IMG/VR virus record: IMGVR_UViG_3300027985_001318
Location: 1 to 64,000 of that record
Reading direction: 5' to 3' (one strand)
DNA: 64,000 nucleotides
Each line of letters begins with the position of its first letter. Position 1 is the stretch's first letter. The position numbers and the translations under genes were made by a program. The notes below the pieces were generated by a model. That model made no database searches. It saw nothing but the letters and a program-made list of their open reading frames with translations, and was not told where the DNA came from. Positions 3,545 through 60,056 of the stretch are shown in pieces.

Positions 3545-5590
3545 ATGTCTGATTTGATGGCTGGTTTGATTGAGAAACGTCTGGCGGTTTCTCAGGAAGG
3601 GGTATTGGATTTTCTGTTTGGTAAGAAGTCCAGCAAGAACGAAACTCCTTCTTTGAAGAAGTTGGAACGACTCGAGGAAGAACTCAAGAAAGTAACGTCT
3701 AGGGAAGCTTTGGACGTAGCCAATGGCCGTAGTAAACCGAGCCAGGAGGTTCTTGACAAACTCATGGAGCTAGCGGAGAAACACGCAGCTCCGTCTATGG
3801 TTTACAAGCAAAACCGGCAGCTGTTTGACATCCTTGTAAAGCTGGTAAAGTTGCCGGAACCTAAACCATACTGGGTTTATGAAGAACTCAGCGGAGCCTC
3901 TTCCGCTAGCGAAGCGGAAAAGATCGCCAAGGATTTCATCCGAGTGATGGAACCCCAGGTTAAGCTGATGTCTCAAGCCAAAAACTTGAAGATCTACGAA
4001 GCCAGTGAGGATCAGCTGTTTGCTGACGTTAGTTCGGGGTTTCAGGCAAATCTGAAGTTTGCTGAGAGTTGTCGCTACGACCACCCCACCCCACACGAAA
4101 CTTATTTGGCAGCCTGTTTGGCTCAGGACTTCGGCTATCCGGCCAGTGTGTTCAGCAATCGTGAAGGCGATGGCGTTAGTGAGCTCTTTGAGCAGAACGA
4201 AACGCTGTTTAAGTCACTAGAAAAAGCTCTGGATGAAATAGCCGATGAAGCCGGGGCTTTCGAAATGTGCTGGATGGGTGGCGATCCAGCCAATCGTAAG
4301 CACTTTTATCCTGGTAACGACGATGTCGATTTCCTGGTACGCGGTCGCTGTATTCTGCTCGACTACGTATTGGACTTGAAGATCGCTCAGGAAGATCTGG
4401 ACGGGAATGACGAAGAAGCTGAAAAGCTCTTTGCCGATATCAATACCGCGATGGAGTCACTGGATGATCTGGAACTTCTGGTAAGTAGCATGGAGGCCGC
4501 TCAAGCTGATCCGCATTTTGGTAAGTACAACTTACCTTTGTACAAATCGATGCTGGATCAAACTTGCGCTAAACTCCAGCTTTCCGGCACCGCACTGTCT
4601 GTCGAGTCTTTTGGTCCGCAGAACGTACTTTCCACCGAAGGCGTCAAAGAAGTTATCTCTAAACTCTACGGGGTAATTAAAGAGCTTCTGGCGAGACTCG
4701 TGACTTGGTTCAAGAACACGTTCACTGCAAAGAACGCTGTGATGTTGAGGATAGCTAAAGGTAACGTTAATGCTCTGAGCAAACTGAACAAAACCAGCTG
4801 GAATGGCGATACCTCTGCCAGTTTCAAAAGTAAATCTGTCTGTGGCCTGATTTTTGCAAAAACTTCCGGTCACTGCAAAAACTTCCGTGAGCTGAAAGAT
4901 TTGTTGGATGGTTGGGACAAACAAATCGAGCATTATCAGGTAGATATCTTTGATTCGTTGCAAATCCTCAAATCTGCGGTTAGAAAACAACCAGAAGACC
5001 AGGAAAAACCACTGGGGGATTTAGAGGAAGGGATATTGGGAGGTAAGAACAACCCAGGTTCTTATGTCAATAAAGCCAGGGAGTTTATGCGACTGGCTGG
5101 TAACGAGCAAGACAAGCGACCGAACGAAGAGAAAGATTACGTCGTTCTGGATAGTCTTGGTAGTTTTGAAGACATGAAGCATTTTTGTCAGAAACTAGAG
5201 CACGACAAAAAGGTTCGCTCTATGGATAATGGGTTGCAAGAGATCATAGACACCTGCGATGATCTTATCAAGAAAGTTAATAAAACCTTGAACGACAACC
5301 CAAACTCCGCCAGAATATGCCGTCATGTTCAGAACGCTCTGAGTTCAGCTTATGCTTTTAACCATCTTCGTGCTGAACTATTGTTTCAGACACATCGCGC
5401 CCTGGAAGTTTCTTTACGAGCCGGGGCTGGCGATAAGAATGGTTCTAGCTATAGCGCTTACCAGCACCAGCAAAACGACCAGCAGTTTATGCAGCAGCAT
5501 AACCAAAATCACCACCAAGCAGTCCAACAGCACAATCAAGATATGCTGCACCATCAGCAGATGGTACAGCACCACAACAGCGGTTTCTAA
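3545..5590 (+). CDS. Internal head protein with multiple S/A-x-E processing sites and a Q/H-rich C-terminus
   Basis: 681 aa; VSQE|GVLDFLFG, IAQE, TAME, SSME, LSVE, LSTE|GVKEVISKL...LVTWFK, typical of phiKZ-like inner head paralogs. Confidence 0.65.
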   Translation: MSDLMAGLIEKRLAVSQEGVLDFLFGKKSSKNETPSLKKLERLEEELKKVTSREALDVANGRSKPSQEVLDKLMELAEKHAAPSMVYKQNRQLFDILVKLVKLPEPKPYWVYEELSGASSASEAEKIAKDFIRVMEPQVKLMSQAKNLKIYEASEDQLFADVSSGFQANLKFAESCRYDHPTPHETYLAACLAQDFGYPASVFSNREGDGVSELFEQNETLFKSLEKALDEIADEAGAFEMCWMGGDPANRKHFYPGNDDVDFLVRGRCILLDYVLDLKIAQEDLDGNDEEAEKLFADINTAMESLDDLELLVSSMEAAQADPHFGKYNLPLYKSMLDQTCAKLQLSGTALSVESFGPQNVLSTEGVKEVISKLYGVIKELLARLVTWFKNTFTAKNAVMLRIAKGNVNALSKLNKTSWNGDTSASFKSKSVCGLIFAKTSGHCKNFRELKDLLDGWDKQIEHYQVDIFDSLQILKSAVRKQPEDQEKPLGDLEEGILGGKNNPGSYVNKAREFMRLAGNEQDKRPNEEKDYVVLDSLGSFEDMKHFCQKLEHDKKVRSMDNGLQEIIDTCDDLIKKVNKTLNDNPNSARICRHVQNALSSAYAFNHLRAELLFQTHRALEVSLRAGAGDKNGSSYSAYQHQQNDQQFMQQHNQNHHQAVQQHNQDMLHHQQMVQHHNSGF

Positions 5591-5598
5591 CCGAGACG

Positions 5599-5628
5599 TA
5601 AAAAAGAGGAGGGCTTTCGCCCTCCTCT
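5599..5628 (-). terminator. Intrinsic terminator
   Basis: On the minus strand, AGAGGAGGGC-GAAA-GCCCTCCTCT followed by a T-run. Confidence 0.8.
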
Positions 5629-5630
5629 AT

Positions 5631-5750
5631 GTCACCAATTCCCAATCCCCTTATACCGTCTCACGACGCTACGTGGGCGCTGCGTAATCCAGCAGCCGGA
5701 CCTTGGATCACCCCCTTATGCTGAGCGAATGCTCGGTGTCTATAGAATTT
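5631..5750 (-). ncRNA. Candidate structured ncRNA downstream of sbcC
   Basis: GC-rich, ORF-poor intergenic region. Hairpins GAGC-AUUC-GCUC, GCUGC-N8-GCAGC and CGUC-GUGA-GACG (GNRA loop); closing helix UCCAA..UCC/GGA-UUGGG; ends at a terminator. Confidence 0.4.
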
Positions 5751-5751
5751 A

Positions 5752-8241
5752 TCAGGAAAGTACAACGTGTTTGTTGTACTCCTTCAAAACCGTTACATTA
5801 CTGGCATCAAGGATAGTCAGTTCTGCATCAGACATAGCTGTGTGAGAGCTAGCATAGTGAGAGACGATAAAGACCATACTGGCTTTTCCAGAAGTCACGT
5901 AGTCCTTAACGAACTGCAATATCTTGCGATGGTGCGTTTCGTCAAAGGTGGCTCCTAACTCATCTAGGTAGATGGGCCATTCTGGTCGTCTAAGGTAAAG
6001 TGCAAGTACTAACTTGAAAGCAAAGTCAATCAAGTCTTTCTGACCCCAACTTGCTTCAGAAACATCTGAGGGACGATTCTCCTCGGATATGATTTCAACC
6101 GGGAACTTATAGTTGAGTTCCCCGTTTTCGATACCGCAAGGATAAACTTTGATATCGTAAGTCCAAAACTTACTGATGATCTCGTTCATCTTCCCTACAA
6201 ACTCCGCAATGAAACCAGAGAGCTGTTCTGCAATCAACCCGTCGGTAGGACTTAGCGCTTCCAATAACTGGTCGTAATGTAGTTCAGCCTGTTTCAGTTC
6301 GGCTATCTGCTGGTTCAGGTCTTGCACTAGGGCTTGGTTTACAGTTACTTCGTGAAGTCGATGCGTAATCAAAGCCAGTTGGCGTTGGTGGGTTTCGATA
6401 AGCTGTTCGATCAAGTTATTGCGTTCAAGTTCGATACGAAGCTGGTAAAGTTCGGAGCGCTTAGCAACCATCCCTCTAACGGCTTCCCCTTCGCTTATGA
6501 AACCCTCAACGCGTTCAAGCTTCTTTGACATCATCTCAATGGTTGAGCTAGTCACTCTAGATTGAGCTGTCAGCTTCTCTATCGTCAACTCAAGGGATTT
6601 AGCTTGGGCTGAGATAAGATCTGCTGGGACTGCGCCTACATTTTTGAAATGTTCCAACACCTCCTTTAGTTTCTTTTCCTCACGTTGTAAATCACGGTAC
6701 TTAGAAAGCTCTCCGAGATATCGTTCAAACTGAGAGATCTCTGAAATCATTCGTTGGGTATTTTGTCTAGCAAACGGGATGGTTGCGAAGATACGCCAAA
6801 GCGCTTGCAGTCTTGGGAATTCAACAACAGCTTTACGGAGTCGTTGCAATCCGTCCTCGTAGCTTAGCTGAAGTTGCTCGTCGCTTTCAGCTAACTCAAG
6901 GGATTTATTCAATTCGAAGAGTTCTTCTTCCAACTTGACCACTACCTGCTTCATCTCTTCCAGGTGATGTTCGTGGACGCCAGGTTTAAACTTGTTCTGA
7001 CATCTAGGACATTCAACTTGAGGGACGTATTGGGTTTGTTGGAGGTCTTGCTGGATGAAATCAATTTTGTTCTTGCGCCGCCCGATTTCCTCTCGCAAAG
7101 TTCTTAGTGCGACTCTACGCTGTTCGGCTGCTTCTTTACTAAAGTCCAACTGGTTCAAGGAAGGGTTAGGCATCGATTGCAAGCAATCTACCAGATAACC
7201 CTTAGCGATCTCCAGCTGCTCTATAGCGAGTCCGCTCTCTTGGATATCCGATTGTCTAACTTCTTCACCGAAAGCTCTCAGAAGCCGCTCTAGTTCGTTT
7301 AAACGAGAAGTTACACTCTCCTTACTCATCCCGTCCCGTTCACTGAGCTCCAACAGCATTTCGTTCAACTGCATAAAGTGTTGTTGGTTAGAATCTATCT
7401 CAGCGTTGGTCTTGTTGAGTTCGGCTTGCAGTTCTGAAATAACGGAGCTGATTTGTTTCGGGGTATCGGCTGTCGAGAACACATCGTTTCTACGCAGCAC
7501 CTGAGCGCAAATTCGATTTAGGTCGCTCTCTATCTGTTCTATCTCTCTTTCGACTTGCCTGGGATGTTGTTGTAGTTCTTGTCGAAAGTTTCGCATCAAT
7601 ACTTCTAGCTCGGCTTTCAGTTGATCTGAATCGCGCTGTAAGGCCAGTATCTCGTTCTGGTCGATAAGTTGAGCGGTTATATTAGCCAAGCGCTTCTCTG
7701 CCGTTTTACGAGCTCCTAACGCATGACTGGCTTGTGTTTTCAGTTTCTGGTAGACGCCCAAAGCGTAACTGAGGTCTACTGGGCAAAGTTCGGTGAACAA
7801 TTCTCGCCGACGCATGTACGGCATTCCAGAAAACCGATTAGCATTCAACTTACCGCTCAACACGGATTGAATCAGTGGGGTGATGCCAAAGTAGCGCTGA
7901 ACGAGCTCTCTCTGTACTGTGGCGGTCCCGCCTTGGTTGAGTTCTAGTTCTGAACCATCGGGTTCTATTTGAACGAATGAATGCTCAAAAGCTTTTTTCT
8001 TTAGCAGAGAGCTTAGCCGAAATCTACCAGTAGGTACTTTGATAAGGAGAACCTTACTTCCTCCCGGGGTATAGTCTTTTGGGTCTGGAGGAAGCGGATG
8101 TAATTCGTTCATCAGTCGGGTCTTACCGCAACCATTGGTGCCGGCGATGATTTGGATTGGACTGCCGAACGTAAAATGTAAGTTACTGATATTCGCAAGA
8201 AATGTACCGCGAAATCCCTTAATGATAGCTTCTTCGATCAT
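5752..8241 (-). CDS. sbcC: SbcC/Rad50-like SMC ATPase
   Basis: Walker A GTNGCGKT, long coiled coils, zinc hook CPRC, signature ASWGQ, Walker B IYLDE, D-loop GATFD, H-loop VSH. Confidence 0.92.
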   Translation of the reverse strand: MIEEAIIKGFRGTFLANISNLHFTFGSPIQIIAGTNGCGKTRLMNELHPLPPDPKDYTPGGSKVLLIKVPTGRFRLSSLLKKKAFEHSFVQIEPDGSELELNQGGTATVQRELVQRYFGITPLIQSVLSGKLNANRFSGMPYMRRRELFTELCPVDLSYALGVYQKLKTQASHALGARKTAEKRLANITAQLIDQNEILALQRDSDQLKAELEVLMRNFRQELQQHPRQVEREIEQIESDLNRICAQVLRRNDVFSTADTPKQISSVISELQAELNKTNAEIDSNQQHFMQLNEMLLELSERDGMSKESVTSRLNELERLLRAFGEEVRQSDIQESGLAIEQLEIAKGYLVDCLQSMPNPSLNQLDFSKEAAEQRRVALRTLREEIGRRKNKIDFIQQDLQQTQYVPQVECPRCQNKFKPGVHEHHLEEMKQVVVKLEEELFELNKSLELAESDEQLQLSYEDGLQRLRKAVVEFPRLQALWRIFATIPFARQNTQRMISEISQFERYLGELSKYRDLQREEKKLKEVLEHFKNVGAVPADLISAQAKSLELTIEKLTAQSRVTSSTIEMMSKKLERVEGFISEGEAVRGMVAKRSELYQLRIELERNNLIEQLIETHQRQLALITHRLHEVTVNQALVQDLNQQIAELKQAELHYDQLLEALSPTDGLIAEQLSGFIAEFVGKMNEIISKFWTYDIKVYPCGIENGELNYKFPVEIISEENRPSDVSEASWGQKDLIDFAFKLVLALYLRRPEWPIYLDELGATFDETHHRKILQFVKDYVTSGKASMVFIVSHYASSHTAMSDAELTILDASNVTVLKEYNKHVVLS

Positions 8242-8307
8242 GGTGATATTTTTTTAGTGATCAGTCCCTATACTTTAGTTGAGAACAGTAAAAGATAACT
8301 GAGGTTG

Positions 8308-9634: not shown

Positions 9635-9668
9635 AAAAAAGAAGGAGGGCGAAAGCCCTCCTCTTTTT
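9635..9668. terminator. Bidirectional intrinsic terminator
   Basis: A-run, AGGAGGGC-GAAA-GCCCTCCT, T-run, between convergent genes. Confidence 0.85.
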
Positions 9669-19805: not shown

Positions 19806-20522
19806 ATGGCTAGCAAACATTTCTATATCGACCTGGACTTCATATTCGATACTAGGATTTCGGTACTCCATAAGCTGGACCCTAACTATCTAAAAAAGGA
19901 GTTCGACCAGAAAAAATATCGTAATCGTACCAACGATCGCTTTGCCACGGAGACGACACCGTTTACTCACCAGGAATGGCTTGATGCTTGGAATAAACGC
20001 GATCTGGAAATCCTACAGAATTCCATCGTCACTAATGGCGTTAAGACCTTACACGAAACCATCGCTTCCATTGATTGGGGTATCGATCCTTCAGATATCT
20101 CGAAGAAAGTAACCGTGACGGTCAACTGCTGGCCTTATAAGGAACTTTCTGATGGAGCCAAGCAAGAAATCTGTAACTGTATCCGTAGACTCTGTCCGAT
20201 GGACATTACGGTAGGTAGTTGCTATGTTCCTCCAGAGCATTTGTTTCTTAAAGAAGCATCTGATCAGTACGATCTGATGTTCCATTACAATCCTTTTGCC
20301 TGGTTGAGGTTTCACGAAAAGGACTTGGAACAACACGATATGGTTTCTCTTTGGATTGTCGCACCTGCGTTGCTCTGGGGAGACGAGTCAACGGAGATCA
20401 ATAATCCCTTACTGAAAAACTACGACCCGTTTACACTCACTGAGATGTTCTGTTCCTCTAAGTTCACTCTCCGCTATATCCCCGTTAGCGATGTTTGTTT
20501 GCTCAAACCAAAAGGGGAATAA
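19806..20522 (+). CDS. Conserved phiKZ-like hypothetical protein
   Basis: 238 aa; AGGAG SD; YIDLDFIFDTR N-terminus, VNCWPY. Confidence 0.7.
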   Translation: MASKHFYIDLDFIFDTRISVLHKLDPNYLKKEFDQKKYRNRTNDRFATETTPFTHQEWLDAWNKRDLEILQNSIVTNGVKTLHETIASIDWGIDPSDISKKVTVTVNCWPYKELSDGAKQEICNCIRRLCPMDITVGSCYVPPEHLFLKEASDQYDLMFHYNPFAWLRFHEKDLEQHDMVSLWIVAPALLWGDESTEINNPLLKNYDPFTLTEMFCSSKFTLRYIPVSDVCLLKPKGE

Positions 20523-20547
20523 GAGGAGGGCTTTCGCCCTCCTCTTT
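20521..20547. terminator. Bidirectional intrinsic terminator
   Basis: AAGAGGAGGGC-TTTC-GCCCTCCTCTT between convergent genes. Confidence 0.75.
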
Positions 20548-48375: not shown

Positions 48376-48399
48376 GCCGGACCAGTGCCGAGTAAGCGT

Positions 48400-48432
48400 A
48401 AAAAAGGAGGGCTTTCGCCCTCCTTTTTTTTT
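48400..48432. terminator. Bidirectional intrinsic terminator
   Basis: AAAAAAGGAGGGC-TTTC-GCCCTCCTTTTTT between convergent genes. Confidence 0.88.
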
Positions 48433-58901: not shown

Positions 58902-58933
58902 AAAGAGGAGGGCGAAAGCCCTCCTCTTTTTTT
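58900..58933 (+). terminator. Intrinsic terminator
   Basis: AAAAGAGGAGGGC-GAAA-GCCCTCCTCTTTT plus T-run. Confidence 0.88.
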
Positions 58934-59461: not shown

Positions 59462-60001
59462 ATGAATATTAAAGTAGAACTTGAGTCACTGGTAAAAGCT
59501 ATTGCTTTTACCACCAATACGTCTGGTCTGAATGAGACCAGCATCCGCTGGATGCCTGACTGGCAAACCTTCATCGGGGTCAATGACTCCGTCCATGGAA
59601 TTGGGGTAGGGATTAATTTCCCTACCAAAGGCCGGATGGTACTTTTCCACAAACTGTTGGTAATCGATTACCAACTCGCAGGGGAACTTGGATTAGTAAA
59701 CGGTGAGTTCTCTTACTGGAAGGATTGTTTCTTCCAGATCTTTGTAGAGCTGCTCGCCAAGGTACACGCCGTCGGCTGGGACGAAGACAAGCTGGTGAGC
59801 GAATTTAAGGTTCGCTTCACAGAAAGTCGTGAGCTGGCCCTCAAGACCCGTAGCGATCGCCATATGAAACTGACGTCTATAGATCTTGGCTTGGAAAGCG
59901 TCAAGCACCGACGCTCCATGAACTCAATCTGTTCTACTGGGATTATGTTCACGGTCTTCGCATTTACGTTGGGCTCTGTGATTGCAGAAGCCCGCGGCTA
60001 A
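59462..60001 (+). CDS. Hypothetical early protein with hydrophobic C-terminus
   Basis: 179 aa; AGGAG SD. Confidence 0.7.
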   Translation: MNIKVELESLVKAIAFTTNTSGLNETSIRWMPDWQTFIGVNDSVHGIGVGINFPTKGRMVLFHKLLVIDYQLAGELGLVNGEFSYWKDCFFQIFVELLAKVHAVGWDEDKLVSEFKVRFTESRELALKTRSDRHMKLTSIDLGLESVKHRRSMNSICSTGIMFTVFAFTLGSVIAEARG

Positions 60002-60029
60002 GAGGAGGGCGAAAGCCCTCCTCTTTTTT
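60000..60029 (+). terminator. Intrinsic terminator
   Basis: AAGAGGAGGGC-GAAA-GCCCTCCTCTTTTT. Confidence 0.85.
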
Positions 60030-60056
60030 AGGTCTTTTTACTTTTGGGGATAAAAA

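What the first reader, a model, noticed from the sequence alone, without database searches (positions are those of the whole stretch)
5631..5750. Candidate structured ncRNA between sbcC and its terminator
Seen: in a genome with mostly tiny AT-rich spacers, this ~120-nt gap is GC-rich and has no convincing ORF. On the minus strand it folds as GAGC-AUUC-GCUC, then a multibranch closed by UCCAA-gg-UCC/GGA-UUGGG that contains GCUGC-UGGAUUAC-GCAGC and CGUC-GUGA-GACG (GNRA loop). AUAAGGGG occurs twice around the core, and a strong terminator follows. It is not a tRNA, hammerhead or group II D5 that I can recognise. Inference: a possibly undescribed jumbo-phage RNA (structural, packaging or decoy).
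Basis: partly seen in the sequence, partly recalled or inferred. Interest (0 to 1): 0.62.

Follow-up and report, generated by a model that had tools for sequence, protein, structure and literature searches.

The report
Conserved ribosome-docking RNA after sbcC
Behind the sbcC repair gene of an uncultured giant phage lies a short, conserved, folded, non-coding RNA stretch that carries the strongest possible match to the ribosome's mRNA-docking tail but has nothing to translate, which hints at an undescribed way for a virus to hold or use ribosomes.

Summary
The gap is real. It is 161 nt between convergent genes (sbcC-like 5752-8241, minus; head-protein-like 3545-5590, plus), with GC 0.53 against a 52-nt median spacer. 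It matches no Rfam family or tRNA and has no conserved ORF.

The only relatives are one sister phage lineage from sewage and other metagenome assemblies (SbcC 64% identical). They keep an 83-nt core (window 5639-5721, minus strand) at 73-86% identity, while four-fold sites in sbcC are saturated at 32%. A 1-nt indel between near-identical strains excludes coding.

One hairpin (5648-5677, GUGA loop) keeps all 10 pairs through three double and three one-sided changes. Its G.U pairs fix the strand as sbcC-sense.

The core opens with a 13-16-nt complement of the 16S rRNA 3' tail (-25 kcal/mol; phage gene starts: median -6.7, best -16.2). It is the only such site in 224 kb, no start codon follows it, and an invariant loop can mask it.

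Best reading: a 3'-UTR or 3'-derived RNA that docks 30S subunits without translation. Its purpose (stabiliser, ribosome delivery or sponge) is untested, and there are no expression data. It is a new RNA motif with a narrow distribution.

The parts
5752..8241 (-). sbcC-like ATPase gene (829 aa). Its leader lacks a Shine-Dalgarno sequence, and a TATAGG promoter-like motif starts at 8272.
   Evidence: ORF list; Pfam SMC_N and AAA_23 below threshold; tblastn to phiKZ-like phage SbcC at 25-30% identity; leader sequences; TATAGG at 8272 conserved in L018.
5740..5754 (-). sbcC stop TGA plus two further in-frame stops (TAA, TAG). TATAG (5740-5744) is conserved in both lineages and may be a weak phage promoter core.
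   Evidence: Sequence and alignment A5. TATAGG is enriched 6-fold in spacers, but TATAG followed by A, C or T only about 2-fold, so a promoter here is doubtful.
5723..5734 (-). Hairpin GAGC-AUUC-GCUC. It occurs only in the window and is not part of the conserved element.
   Evidence: A 12-nt deletion covers it in all sister-lineage sequences.
5703..5718 (-). Anti-anti-SD arm: a 16-nt complement of the 16S rRNA 3' tail with one G.U (13-15 nt, all Watson-Crick, in the sister lineage).
   Evidence: It is the only 14/14 site on either strand of the 223,650-bp genome. Duplex energy is -25.4 kcal/mol, against a median of -6.65 and a best of -16.2 for 204 gene starts. It is invariant except for one A/G change that keeps pairing.
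5697..5700 (-). 5' strand of the junction-closing helix P0 (UCCG), pairing with 5640-5643.
   Evidence: Three of four pairs are invariant and one is broken in the window, so P0 is predicted only.
5679..5696 (-). Hairpin Pa: a 5-bp stem with the invariant loop UGGAUUAC (5684-5691). This loop is complementary to GUGAUCCA of the arm, which gives an alternative masking helix.
   Evidence: The closing pair alternates G-C and G.U and the rest is invariant. The alternative 8-bp helix is the predicted MFE in the window, L018 and L021; pairing probabilities for window, L009, L018 and L028 show the arm largely paired.
5648..5677 (-). Hairpin Pb: 3+3+4 bp with two internal loops and a GUGA (GNRA) tetraloop at 5661-5664. 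This is the part proven by covariation.
   Evidence: All 10 pairs are 100% paired in 6 sequences: 3 pairs changed on both sides and 3 on one side through G.U. One more compensated change lies inside the sister lineage, in L028. Energy is -11 to -14 kcal/mol in the minus sense against -3 to -11 in the plus sense.
5639..5650 (-). Conserved G-rich tail (GGG, a 3-4 nt spacer, GGGAA). It supplies the 3' strands of the Pb base and of P0 and marks the 3' edge of the conserved module.
   Evidence: Alignments A5 and A6. The blastn match to the sister lineage ends at 5639, and a recombination breakpoint lies at the same place.
5599..5628 (-). Intrinsic terminator: a 10-bp hairpin plus U6, unidirectional for the sbcC-sense strand. 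It belongs to a hairpin family repeated about 30 times in the genome.
   Evidence: Terminator scan; genome-wide copies. In the sister lineage the hairpin is exchanged and has no U-run.
3545..5590 (+). Convergent neighbour: a 681-aa protein with a weak phiKZ internal-head-protein match. It is not part of the element.
   Evidence: Pfam PF12699 at 20.8 bits, below the 27-bit cutoff. In the sister lineage this gene is a divergent allele beyond the breakpoint.

Best explanation
The 83-nt core (window 5639-5721, minus strand) is a selected, non-coding, structured RNA that travels with sbcC. It is most likely the 3' UTR of the sbcC mRNA, or a small RNA processed from it. It has three parts: (i) a 5' arm that is a full-length complement of the single-stranded 3' tail of 16S rRNA; (ii) a hairpin whose invariant loop imitates part of that tail and can mask the arm in cis; and (iii) a three-way junction that starts 3-4 nt after the arm and contains a GNRA-capped hairpin.

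I propose that the exposed 5' half of the arm nucleates pairing with the anti-SD tail of a 30S subunit, and that the much stronger arm-tail duplex then displaces the masking loop. The ribosome would be held without initiating, because no start codon follows and the junction sits where the P-site codon would lie. The most likely consequence is protection or stabilisation of the transcript, or retention of ribosomes on an mRNA whose own start site has no SD.

Shown: conservation, non-coding status, strand, hairpin Pb, and the uniqueness and strength of the complementarity. Inferred: transcript boundaries, 30S binding, the switch, and the physiological effect.
For: - Selection: the core is 73% identical (86% from the arm through Pa) between lineages whose sbcC four-fold sites are 32% identical.
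- Non-coding: a 1-nt indel lies in the core between strains with 99% identical SbcC, and no start codon is conserved.
- RNA and strand: Pb keeps 10 of 10 pairs with 3 double and 3 single compensations. On the whole structure, 5/500 shuffles reach the covariation score and 6/500 reach its count of double-changed pairs, and slid controls fall to 35-55% paired. The plus-sense fold is weak.
- 16S complementarity: this is the only full-length site in the genome. Its energy is -25.4/-25.8 kcal/mol in both lineages, against a best of -16.2 for any gene start. The one A-to-G difference keeps pairing with the tail (G.U) but destroys a GGA motif.
- Host ribosomes read SDs: the phage's genes carry AGGAG at -12 to -7.
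- Masking helix: it is predicted in the ensemble, with the 5' toehold left free.
- Linkage to sbcC: a recombination breakpoint sits exactly at the 3' edge of the element.
- sbcC lacks an SD in both lineages.
- Precedent: STAB-SD, an SD-like sequence that binds 30S without translation and stabilises mRNA (PMC4113751).
Against: - There is no RNA evidence at all. No listed run holding the stretch is on record as RNA, and the runs that were laid were contigs.
- Only two lineages exist, so the covariation rests on few independent events, and Pa, P0 and the masking helix are invariant and untestable.
- The arm is predicted to be largely paired in isolation.
- Known SD stabilisers act at 5' ends against 5'-3' decay, not in 3' UTRs.
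- The sister lineage has no U-run after its hairpin, so the 3' end there is unclear.
- The core's folding energy is not better than shuffles.
- The host is unknown, so its 16S tail is assumed to be the canonical one.
Confidence: 0.4

Rival explanations
1. It is a protein-binding regulatory RNA. The purine-rich arm, the invariant UGGAUUAC loop and the GNRA hairpin would be the operator or sponge for a phage or host RNA-binding protein (a CsrA/RsmA-type GGA binder, a translational repressor or a nuclease), and the likeness to an SD would be a by-product.
For: An invariant 8-nt loop with GGA sits on a short stem, and further GGA motifs lie in the G-rich tail. A weak whole-length alignment to PrrB_RsmZ was found (15 bits, E 0.41). 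Absolute invariance of unpaired bases is typical of protein contacts.
Against: The RsmZ score is far below the 44-bit gathering threshold. The window's arm has lost GGA (AAGGGGG) while keeping pairing to 16S. A 13-16-nt exact complement of the rRNA tail is far more than a GGA binder needs, and it is unique in the genome.
Confidence: 0.2
2. It is a trans-acting base-pairing small RNA, either transcribed from the conserved TATAG just after the sbcC stop or cut from the 3' UTR. Its arm would pair with C/U-rich, anti-SD-like sequences in host or phage RNAs rather than with ribosomes.
For: TATAG is conserved in both lineages 8 nt after the stop, and TATAG-type motifs precede many genes by 20-30 nt. 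The window has a terminator with U6, like Hfq-type sRNAs. phiKZ late promoters are a comparably short motif at the start site (PMC7598289).
Against: Both copies lack the G of TATAGG, the version that is enriched. No second complementary site exists in the phage genome. The sister lineage has no U tail. The only known cellular RNA with this complement is 16S itself.
Confidence: 0.15
3. It is a translation start region of a tiny or unconventional ORF: a super-SD with a cis anti-SD, as in riboswitch or thermometer expression platforms.
For: The SD-plus-masking-helix layout is that of a regulated ribosome-binding site. A frame starting at the GUG inside the arm is open for 12-19 codons (sequences).
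Against: No AUG, GUG or UUG lies 5-10 nt after the SD core. The 1-nt indel shifts the frame between strains that are 99% identical. The 3-codon mini-ORF before the terminator starts with UUU in L009 and AUA in L028.
Confidence: 0.05
4. It is a DNA-level element (a protein-binding site, a replication or recombination signal, or a hairpin substrate related to SbcCD) or a neutral remnant of a lost gene.
For: It lies next to a recombination breakpoint, beside a DNA-repair gene and 5.6 kb from the genome end.
Against: Compensatory changes through G.U pairs are strand-specific and point to RNA. A neutral remnant cannot stay 73-86% identical when four-fold sites are saturated.
Confidence: 0.08

Closest known systems
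STAB-SD 5' mRNA stabiliser (Bacillus thuringiensis cry3A; PMC4113751)
   Same: It is an SD-like sequence that does not direct initiation, pairs with the 3' end of 16S rRNA, and acts by holding a 30S subunit on the RNA.
   Different: STAB-SD sits near the 5' end and blocks the 5'-3' exonuclease RNase J1 in Gram-positive bacteria. This element lies after the ORF, has a much longer complement (13-16 nt), and is coupled to a masking loop and a three-way junction. 30S binding is untested here.
icaR-type 3' UTR control (Staphylococcus aureus; PMC3868564)
   Same: It is a functional element in a bacterial-type 3' UTR that plays on SD/anti-SD complementarity.
   Different: The icaR 3' UTR carries an anti-SD motif that pairs with its own 5' SD. 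Here the 3' UTR carries the SD itself, sbcC has no 5' SD, and 5'-3' pairing is no better than shuffled controls.
SD-masking expression platforms (translational riboswitches, RNA thermometers; own knowledge)
   Same: An SD faces a cis anti-SD-like strand, with two mutually exclusive helices.
   Different: Those elements gate a start codon immediately downstream. No start codon or conserved frame exists here.
Ribosome 'entrapment' by folded mRNAs on the 30S platform (rpsO/S15, thrS; own knowledge) and ribosome-associated ncRNAs (e.g. Haloferax, PMC6104027)
   Same: An RNA is held on the small subunit in a non-initiating state, or a non-coding RNA acts directly on the ribosome.
   Different: Entrapment operators precede their own gene and need a repressor protein. 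Known ribosome-associated ncRNAs are not built around a full anti-SD complement. No binding data exist here.
CsrB/RsmZ protein sponges (Rfam RF00166)
   Same: GGA-containing loops and a terminal hairpin.
   Different: The score is 15 bits against a 44-bit threshold. There is only one GGA hairpin loop, and the GGA in the arm is not conserved.

Membership tests
Any Rfam 15 family | Covariance-model score at or above the family's gathering threshold | tested here: not met
   The best hit over the core is PrrB_RsmZ at 15 bits against 44. The higher-scoring miRNA-type hits cover only the terminator hairpin. The sister-lineage copy also matches nothing.
tRNA / tmRNA | Cloverleaf detected by ARAGORN | tested here: not met
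   No genes were found in the whole 64-kb window.
Protein-coding small gene | Reading frame and start codon conserved among relatives | tested here: not met
   A 1-nt indel (UCC[U]AAG) separates L009/L022 from L018/L021/L025/L028, whose SbcC proteins are about 99% identical. No canonical start lies at SD spacing, and Pfam finds nothing for the 31- and 34-aa ORFs.
STAB-SD-type stabiliser | SD-like sequence complementary to the 16S 3' end that is not used for initiation | tested here: met
   Complementarity is 13-16 nt at -25 kcal/mol, unique in the genome, with no start codon behind it.
STAB-SD-type stabiliser | Position close to the 5' end of the stabilised transcript | tested here: inconclusive
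   The arm lies 34 nt after the sbcC stop (33-37 nt across lineages). It would be 5'-proximal only if the conserved TATAG (5740-5744) is a promoter, which the motif statistics do not support well.
STAB-SD-type stabiliser | 30S binding that lengthens RNA half-life | not testable with these tools
   This needs 30S binding or toeprint assays and decay assays.
Translational riboswitch / thermometer platform | SD alternately masked by a cis-complementary strand | tested here: inconclusive
   An 8-bp helix GUGAUCCA/UGGAUUAC is predicted and competes with Pa. Both strands are invariant, so no covariation test is possible.
Translational riboswitch / thermometer platform | Regulated ORF starting just downstream | tested here: not met
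   There is no start codon or conserved frame, and the next feature is the terminator.
CsrA/RsmA sponge RNA | Several conserved GGA motifs presented in hairpin loops | tested here: not met
   Only the Pa loop qualifies. The arm's GGA is lost in the window, and the Rfam score is sub-threshold.
icaR-like 5'-3' UTR pairing | 3' UTR pairs with the mRNA's own translation start region better than chance | tested here: not met
   Duplex energy is -22.1 kcal/mol in the window (39% of shuffles are as good) and -14.0 in L018 (93% as good).
Intrinsic terminator | GC-rich hairpin followed by a U-run on the transcribed strand | tested here: met
   In the window: 5628-5605 plus T6 on the minus strand. This is not met in the sister lineage, where the hairpin lacks a U-run.

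The most novel reading that the evidence does not exclude
The element would be a phage counterpart of the 3' cap-independent translation enhancers of plant viruses. A 3'-UTR module captures 30S subunits through a maximal SD:anti-SD duplex and hands them to, or keeps them on, an mRNA whose own start site has no SD. Alternatively, if abundant, it would act as a switchable sponge for the anti-SD tail of host ribosomes during infection.
Probability: 0.12. Interest if true: 0.85.

Novelty: new variant of a known kind. Interest (0 to 1): 0.6.

Why it matters
Non-initiating ribosome docking by an SD-like sequence is known from a few 5' leaders. A conserved, structured 3'-UTR module in a nucleus-forming-type giant phage, built around the longest possible anti-SD complement and a built-in mask, has no match in Rfam 15 and did not turn up in my four literature searches. 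If it binds 30S subunits, it would be a compact natural RNA that captures ribosomes without translation. That would bear on how phage mRNAs made behind a nuclear shell compete for host ribosomes. It would also be useful as an RNA stabiliser or ribosome-recruiting part, and it opens a search for 'orphan super-SDs' in other phages; one candidate was seen in coliphage Goslar.

Tried and rejected
1. Rfam at permissive E-values on both lineages gave no family, and ARAGORN found none.

2. Coding was rejected by the 1-nt indel and the lack of starts. This covers the +1-frame extension of sbcC, the plus-strand 31-aa ORF, the CUG-started frame and the 3-codon mini-ORF before the terminator. The last one starts with UUU in L009 and AUA in L028.

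3. Pairing between the sbcC 5' UTR and the element is no better than shuffled controls.

4. Searches for relatives:
- GenBank phages by DNA gave nothing.
- IMG/VR by protein and by three DNA patterns gave only chance coding hits.
- JGI metagenomes by a pattern that lets the Pa stem vary gave three more sister-lineage copies plus three chance hits.
- Bacterial genomes gave none.
- Model R1 found a single copy in the phage's own genome. It found nothing in three GenBank jumbo phages, nothing beyond a marginal 10-bit match to the Goslar spacer, and nothing in four contigs of more distant SbcC relatives.

5. A word search with the SbcC C-terminus, meant to catch fragments, found only sister-lineage or distant fragments.

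6. Laying wastewater runs showed a contig about 96% identical over 5591-5741, but its six differences were not listed. No run is on record as RNA, so there is no expression evidence either way.

7. An own promoter at TATAG remains open but is weakly supported.

8. The Goslar orphan SD is not homologous by the model (10 bits) and has no relatives, so its conservation cannot be tested.

9. A PCR-primer or assembly artefact was considered, because the arm equals a universal 16S reverse primer site. It was rejected because the same sequence with conserved flanks occurs in independent assemblies from several studies.

Full report
**Setting.** The window is the first 64 kb of a 223,650-bp IMG/VR virus record with direct terminal repeats. 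It is a phiKZ-like jumbo phage. The 681-aa product of 3545-5590 (+) has a weak phiKZ internal-head-protein match. The 829-aa product of 5752-8241 (-) is an SMC/SbcC-type ATPase, 25-30% identical to the SbcC of many phiKZ-like phages. The two genes converge. Between them lie 161 nt (5591-5751) with GC 0.53, in a genome with 47% GC, a 52-nt median spacer and mostly AT-rich gaps.

**The observation.** A 10-bp hairpin plus T6 (5628-5599) is a textbook terminator for the sbcC-sense strand only. ARAGORN and Rfam 15, run at permissive E-values, give nothing for the core. Folding energy alone does not set the core apart from shuffles (z -1.25). The z of -3.1 for the whole stretch comes from the terminator.

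**Relatives.**
- GenBank phages have no DNA match, and SbcC identity is at most 30%.
- In eight such phages and contigs, sbcC is followed by about 5-60 nt or by an overlapping gene, so the long spacer is lineage-specific.
- A word search of 5.8 billion proteins found a single closer lineage, with SbcC 64% identical. It is present in many sewage and other metagenome assemblies as strains about 99% identical to each other.
- A DNA pattern scan of JGI metagenomes added three more copies, one of them (L028) with a variant hairpin.
- The locus is syntenic between the lineages.
- Runs labelled wastewater hold contigs about 96% identical to the window.

**It is selected and non-coding.** Between the two lineages, four-fold degenerate sites of sbcC are 32% identical, which means they are saturated. 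The 84-column core is 73% identical, and the stretch from the arm through hairpin Pa is 86% identical, matching the best-conserved 5% of sbcC windows. The blastn match runs from sbcC through the spacer and stops at 5639. Inside the sister lineage a 1-nt indel lies in the middle of the core between strains with 99% identical SbcC. No frame or start codon is conserved on either strand.

**It is RNA, in the sbcC sense.** The hairpin at 5648-5677 (3+3+4 bp, GUGA tetraloop) has the same architecture in all six distinct sequences.
- All 10 pairs are kept: three changed on both sides and three on one side through G.U.
- L028 adds a further compensated change within the sister lineage.
- On the whole structure, 5 of 500 column shuffles reach the observed covariation score and 6 of 500 reach its count of double-changed pairs. 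Sliding the partners drops pairing from 99% to 35-55%.
- Because up to five of the 19 pairs are G.U, the plus-sense fold is much weaker: Pb is -3 to -11 against -11 to -14 kcal/mol.
- The 5-bp hairpin Pa (5679-5696) and the 4-bp junction helix P0 are almost invariant, so they are only predicted.

**The key feature.** The core opens with a complement of the 3' tail of 16S rRNA. It is 16 nt in the window (5703-5718, one G.U) and 13-15 nt, all Watson-Crick, in the sister lineage.
- It is the only full-length match on either strand of the genome.
- Its duplex energy with the canonical tail is -25.4 (window) and -25.8 (L018) kcal/mol, against a median of -6.65 and a best of -16.2 for 204 gene starts.
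- The phage's genes use ordinary AGGAG-type SDs at -12 to -7, so the host ribosome reads SDs.
- The single difference between lineages (A/G) keeps pairing with the tail but removes a GGA motif. This argues for RNA pairing rather than a GGA-binding protein.
- No AUG, GUG or UUG lies at initiation distance. P0 begins 3-4 nt after the arm, where a P-site codon would sit.
- The invariant Pa loop UGGAUUAC is complementary to GUGAUCCA of the arm. This 8-bp helix excludes Pa and dominates the predicted ensemble, while the 5' AAG(G) of the arm stays free.

**Mechanism proposed (inference).** The free 5' part of the arm acts as a toehold for the anti-SD tail. The far stronger arm-tail duplex then displaces the masking loop, and Pa and P0 form. 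A 30S subunit is held without initiating. The precedent is STAB-SD, an untranslated SD that binds 30S and stabilises cry3A mRNA (PMC4113751). The differences are the position after the ORF, the length of the complement and the attached fold.

Two observations tie the element to sbcC. A recombination breakpoint between sister strains falls exactly at its 3' edge: 98.6% identity up to there, then a different terminator and a divergent neighbour gene. The sbcC leader has no SD in either lineage. Whether the effect is stabilisation, ribosome retention or delivery, or titration cannot be told from sequence.

**Transcript boundaries.** A TATAGG motif about 25 nt before start codons is enriched 6-fold in spacers, and it precedes sbcC in both lineages. 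It recalls the short TATG start-site motif of phiKZ late promoters (PMC7598289). A conserved TATAG sits 8 nt after the sbcC stop, but it lacks the final G, and that class is enriched only about 2-fold. It also forms the third in-frame stop. I therefore favour a 3' UTR over an independent sRNA, roughly 60:40.

**Rivals and rejected ideas.** A protein operator or sponge, a trans-acting sRNA, a micro-ORF and a DNA element are weighed in the Rival explanations section. Pairing between the 5' and 3' UTRs, as in icaR (PMC3868564), is no better than shuffles.

**Limits.**
- Only two lineages are known, so few independent substitutions underlie the covariation.
- There are no RNA data.
- The host is unknown.
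- The sister lineage's hairpin lacks a U-run.

Noticed in passing
window 5605-5628 and about 30 other places in G000 (e.g. 58904-58932, 60001-60034, 9643-9668, 20518-20545, 48397-48424): One terminator hairpin family (GAGGAGGGC-GAAA-GCCCUCCUC and near variants) is reused about 30 times in both orientations. The same family occurs in the sister lineage (L018 8916-8959).
   Followed up: partly
window 8272(-), 58976(-), 47154(-), 42882(-); G000 96549, 136438, 152076, 183797, 201458 (all -): A promoter-like TATAGG motif is enriched 6-fold in spacers. A long, nearly identical version (TAAGGCATATAGGTCTGAGATT) heads several AT-rich spacers, and the copy before sbcC is conserved in the sister lineage. 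These are probably promoters of the phage's own RNA polymerase.
   Followed up: partly
window 8242-8272 (-); L018 9971-10000: sbcC has no Shine-Dalgarno sequence. Both lineages have an A-rich leader (AAAAAAAUAUCA[C/U]CAUG).
   Followed up: partly
window 5740-5754 (-): Three in-frame stop codons end sbcC in both lineages (TGA TAA .. .. TAG in the window, TAG TGA .. .. TAG in the sister lineage).
   Followed up: no
L044 1028-1040 (= Escherichia phage Goslar MK327938.1 87361-87373, minus strand): An orphan UAGGAGGUGAUCC lies in a 213-nt spacer, 40 nt after the stop of Goslar_00077 and about 160 nt before Goslar_00076. All three frames are closed, and the sequence is followed by its own anti-SD-like CUCC run. 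It is not homologous by model R1 and has no relatives in GenBank phages. It may be a second case of the same theme, or chance.
   Followed up: partly
L009 4069/4070 = L018 12594/12595 (window equivalent about 5639): There is a recombination breakpoint between strains about 99% identical. Upstream identity is 98.6%. Downstream lie a different terminator hairpin and a divergent allele of the head-protein-like gene.
   Followed up: yes
G000 482-525, 1398-1443, 1587-1626 (window) and 220311-220357, 221424-221485, 221821-221866: A family of 40-60-nt repeats clusters near both genome ends and matches L018 17347-17408. It may be related to the terminal repeats or to packaging.
   Followed up: no
window 5470-5590 (+): The C-terminus of the 681-aa head-protein-like gene is a Gln/His-rich low-complexity tail. 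Its antisense strand gives long spurious open frames.
   Followed up: no
window 5300-6300: The best DNA holders are labelled 'hydrothermal vent metagenome' and 'metagenome'. Contigs about 96-97% identical occur in several wastewater runs, and the sister lineage comes from global sewage assemblies. The habitat label of the source sample may therefore be misleading.
   Followed up: partly
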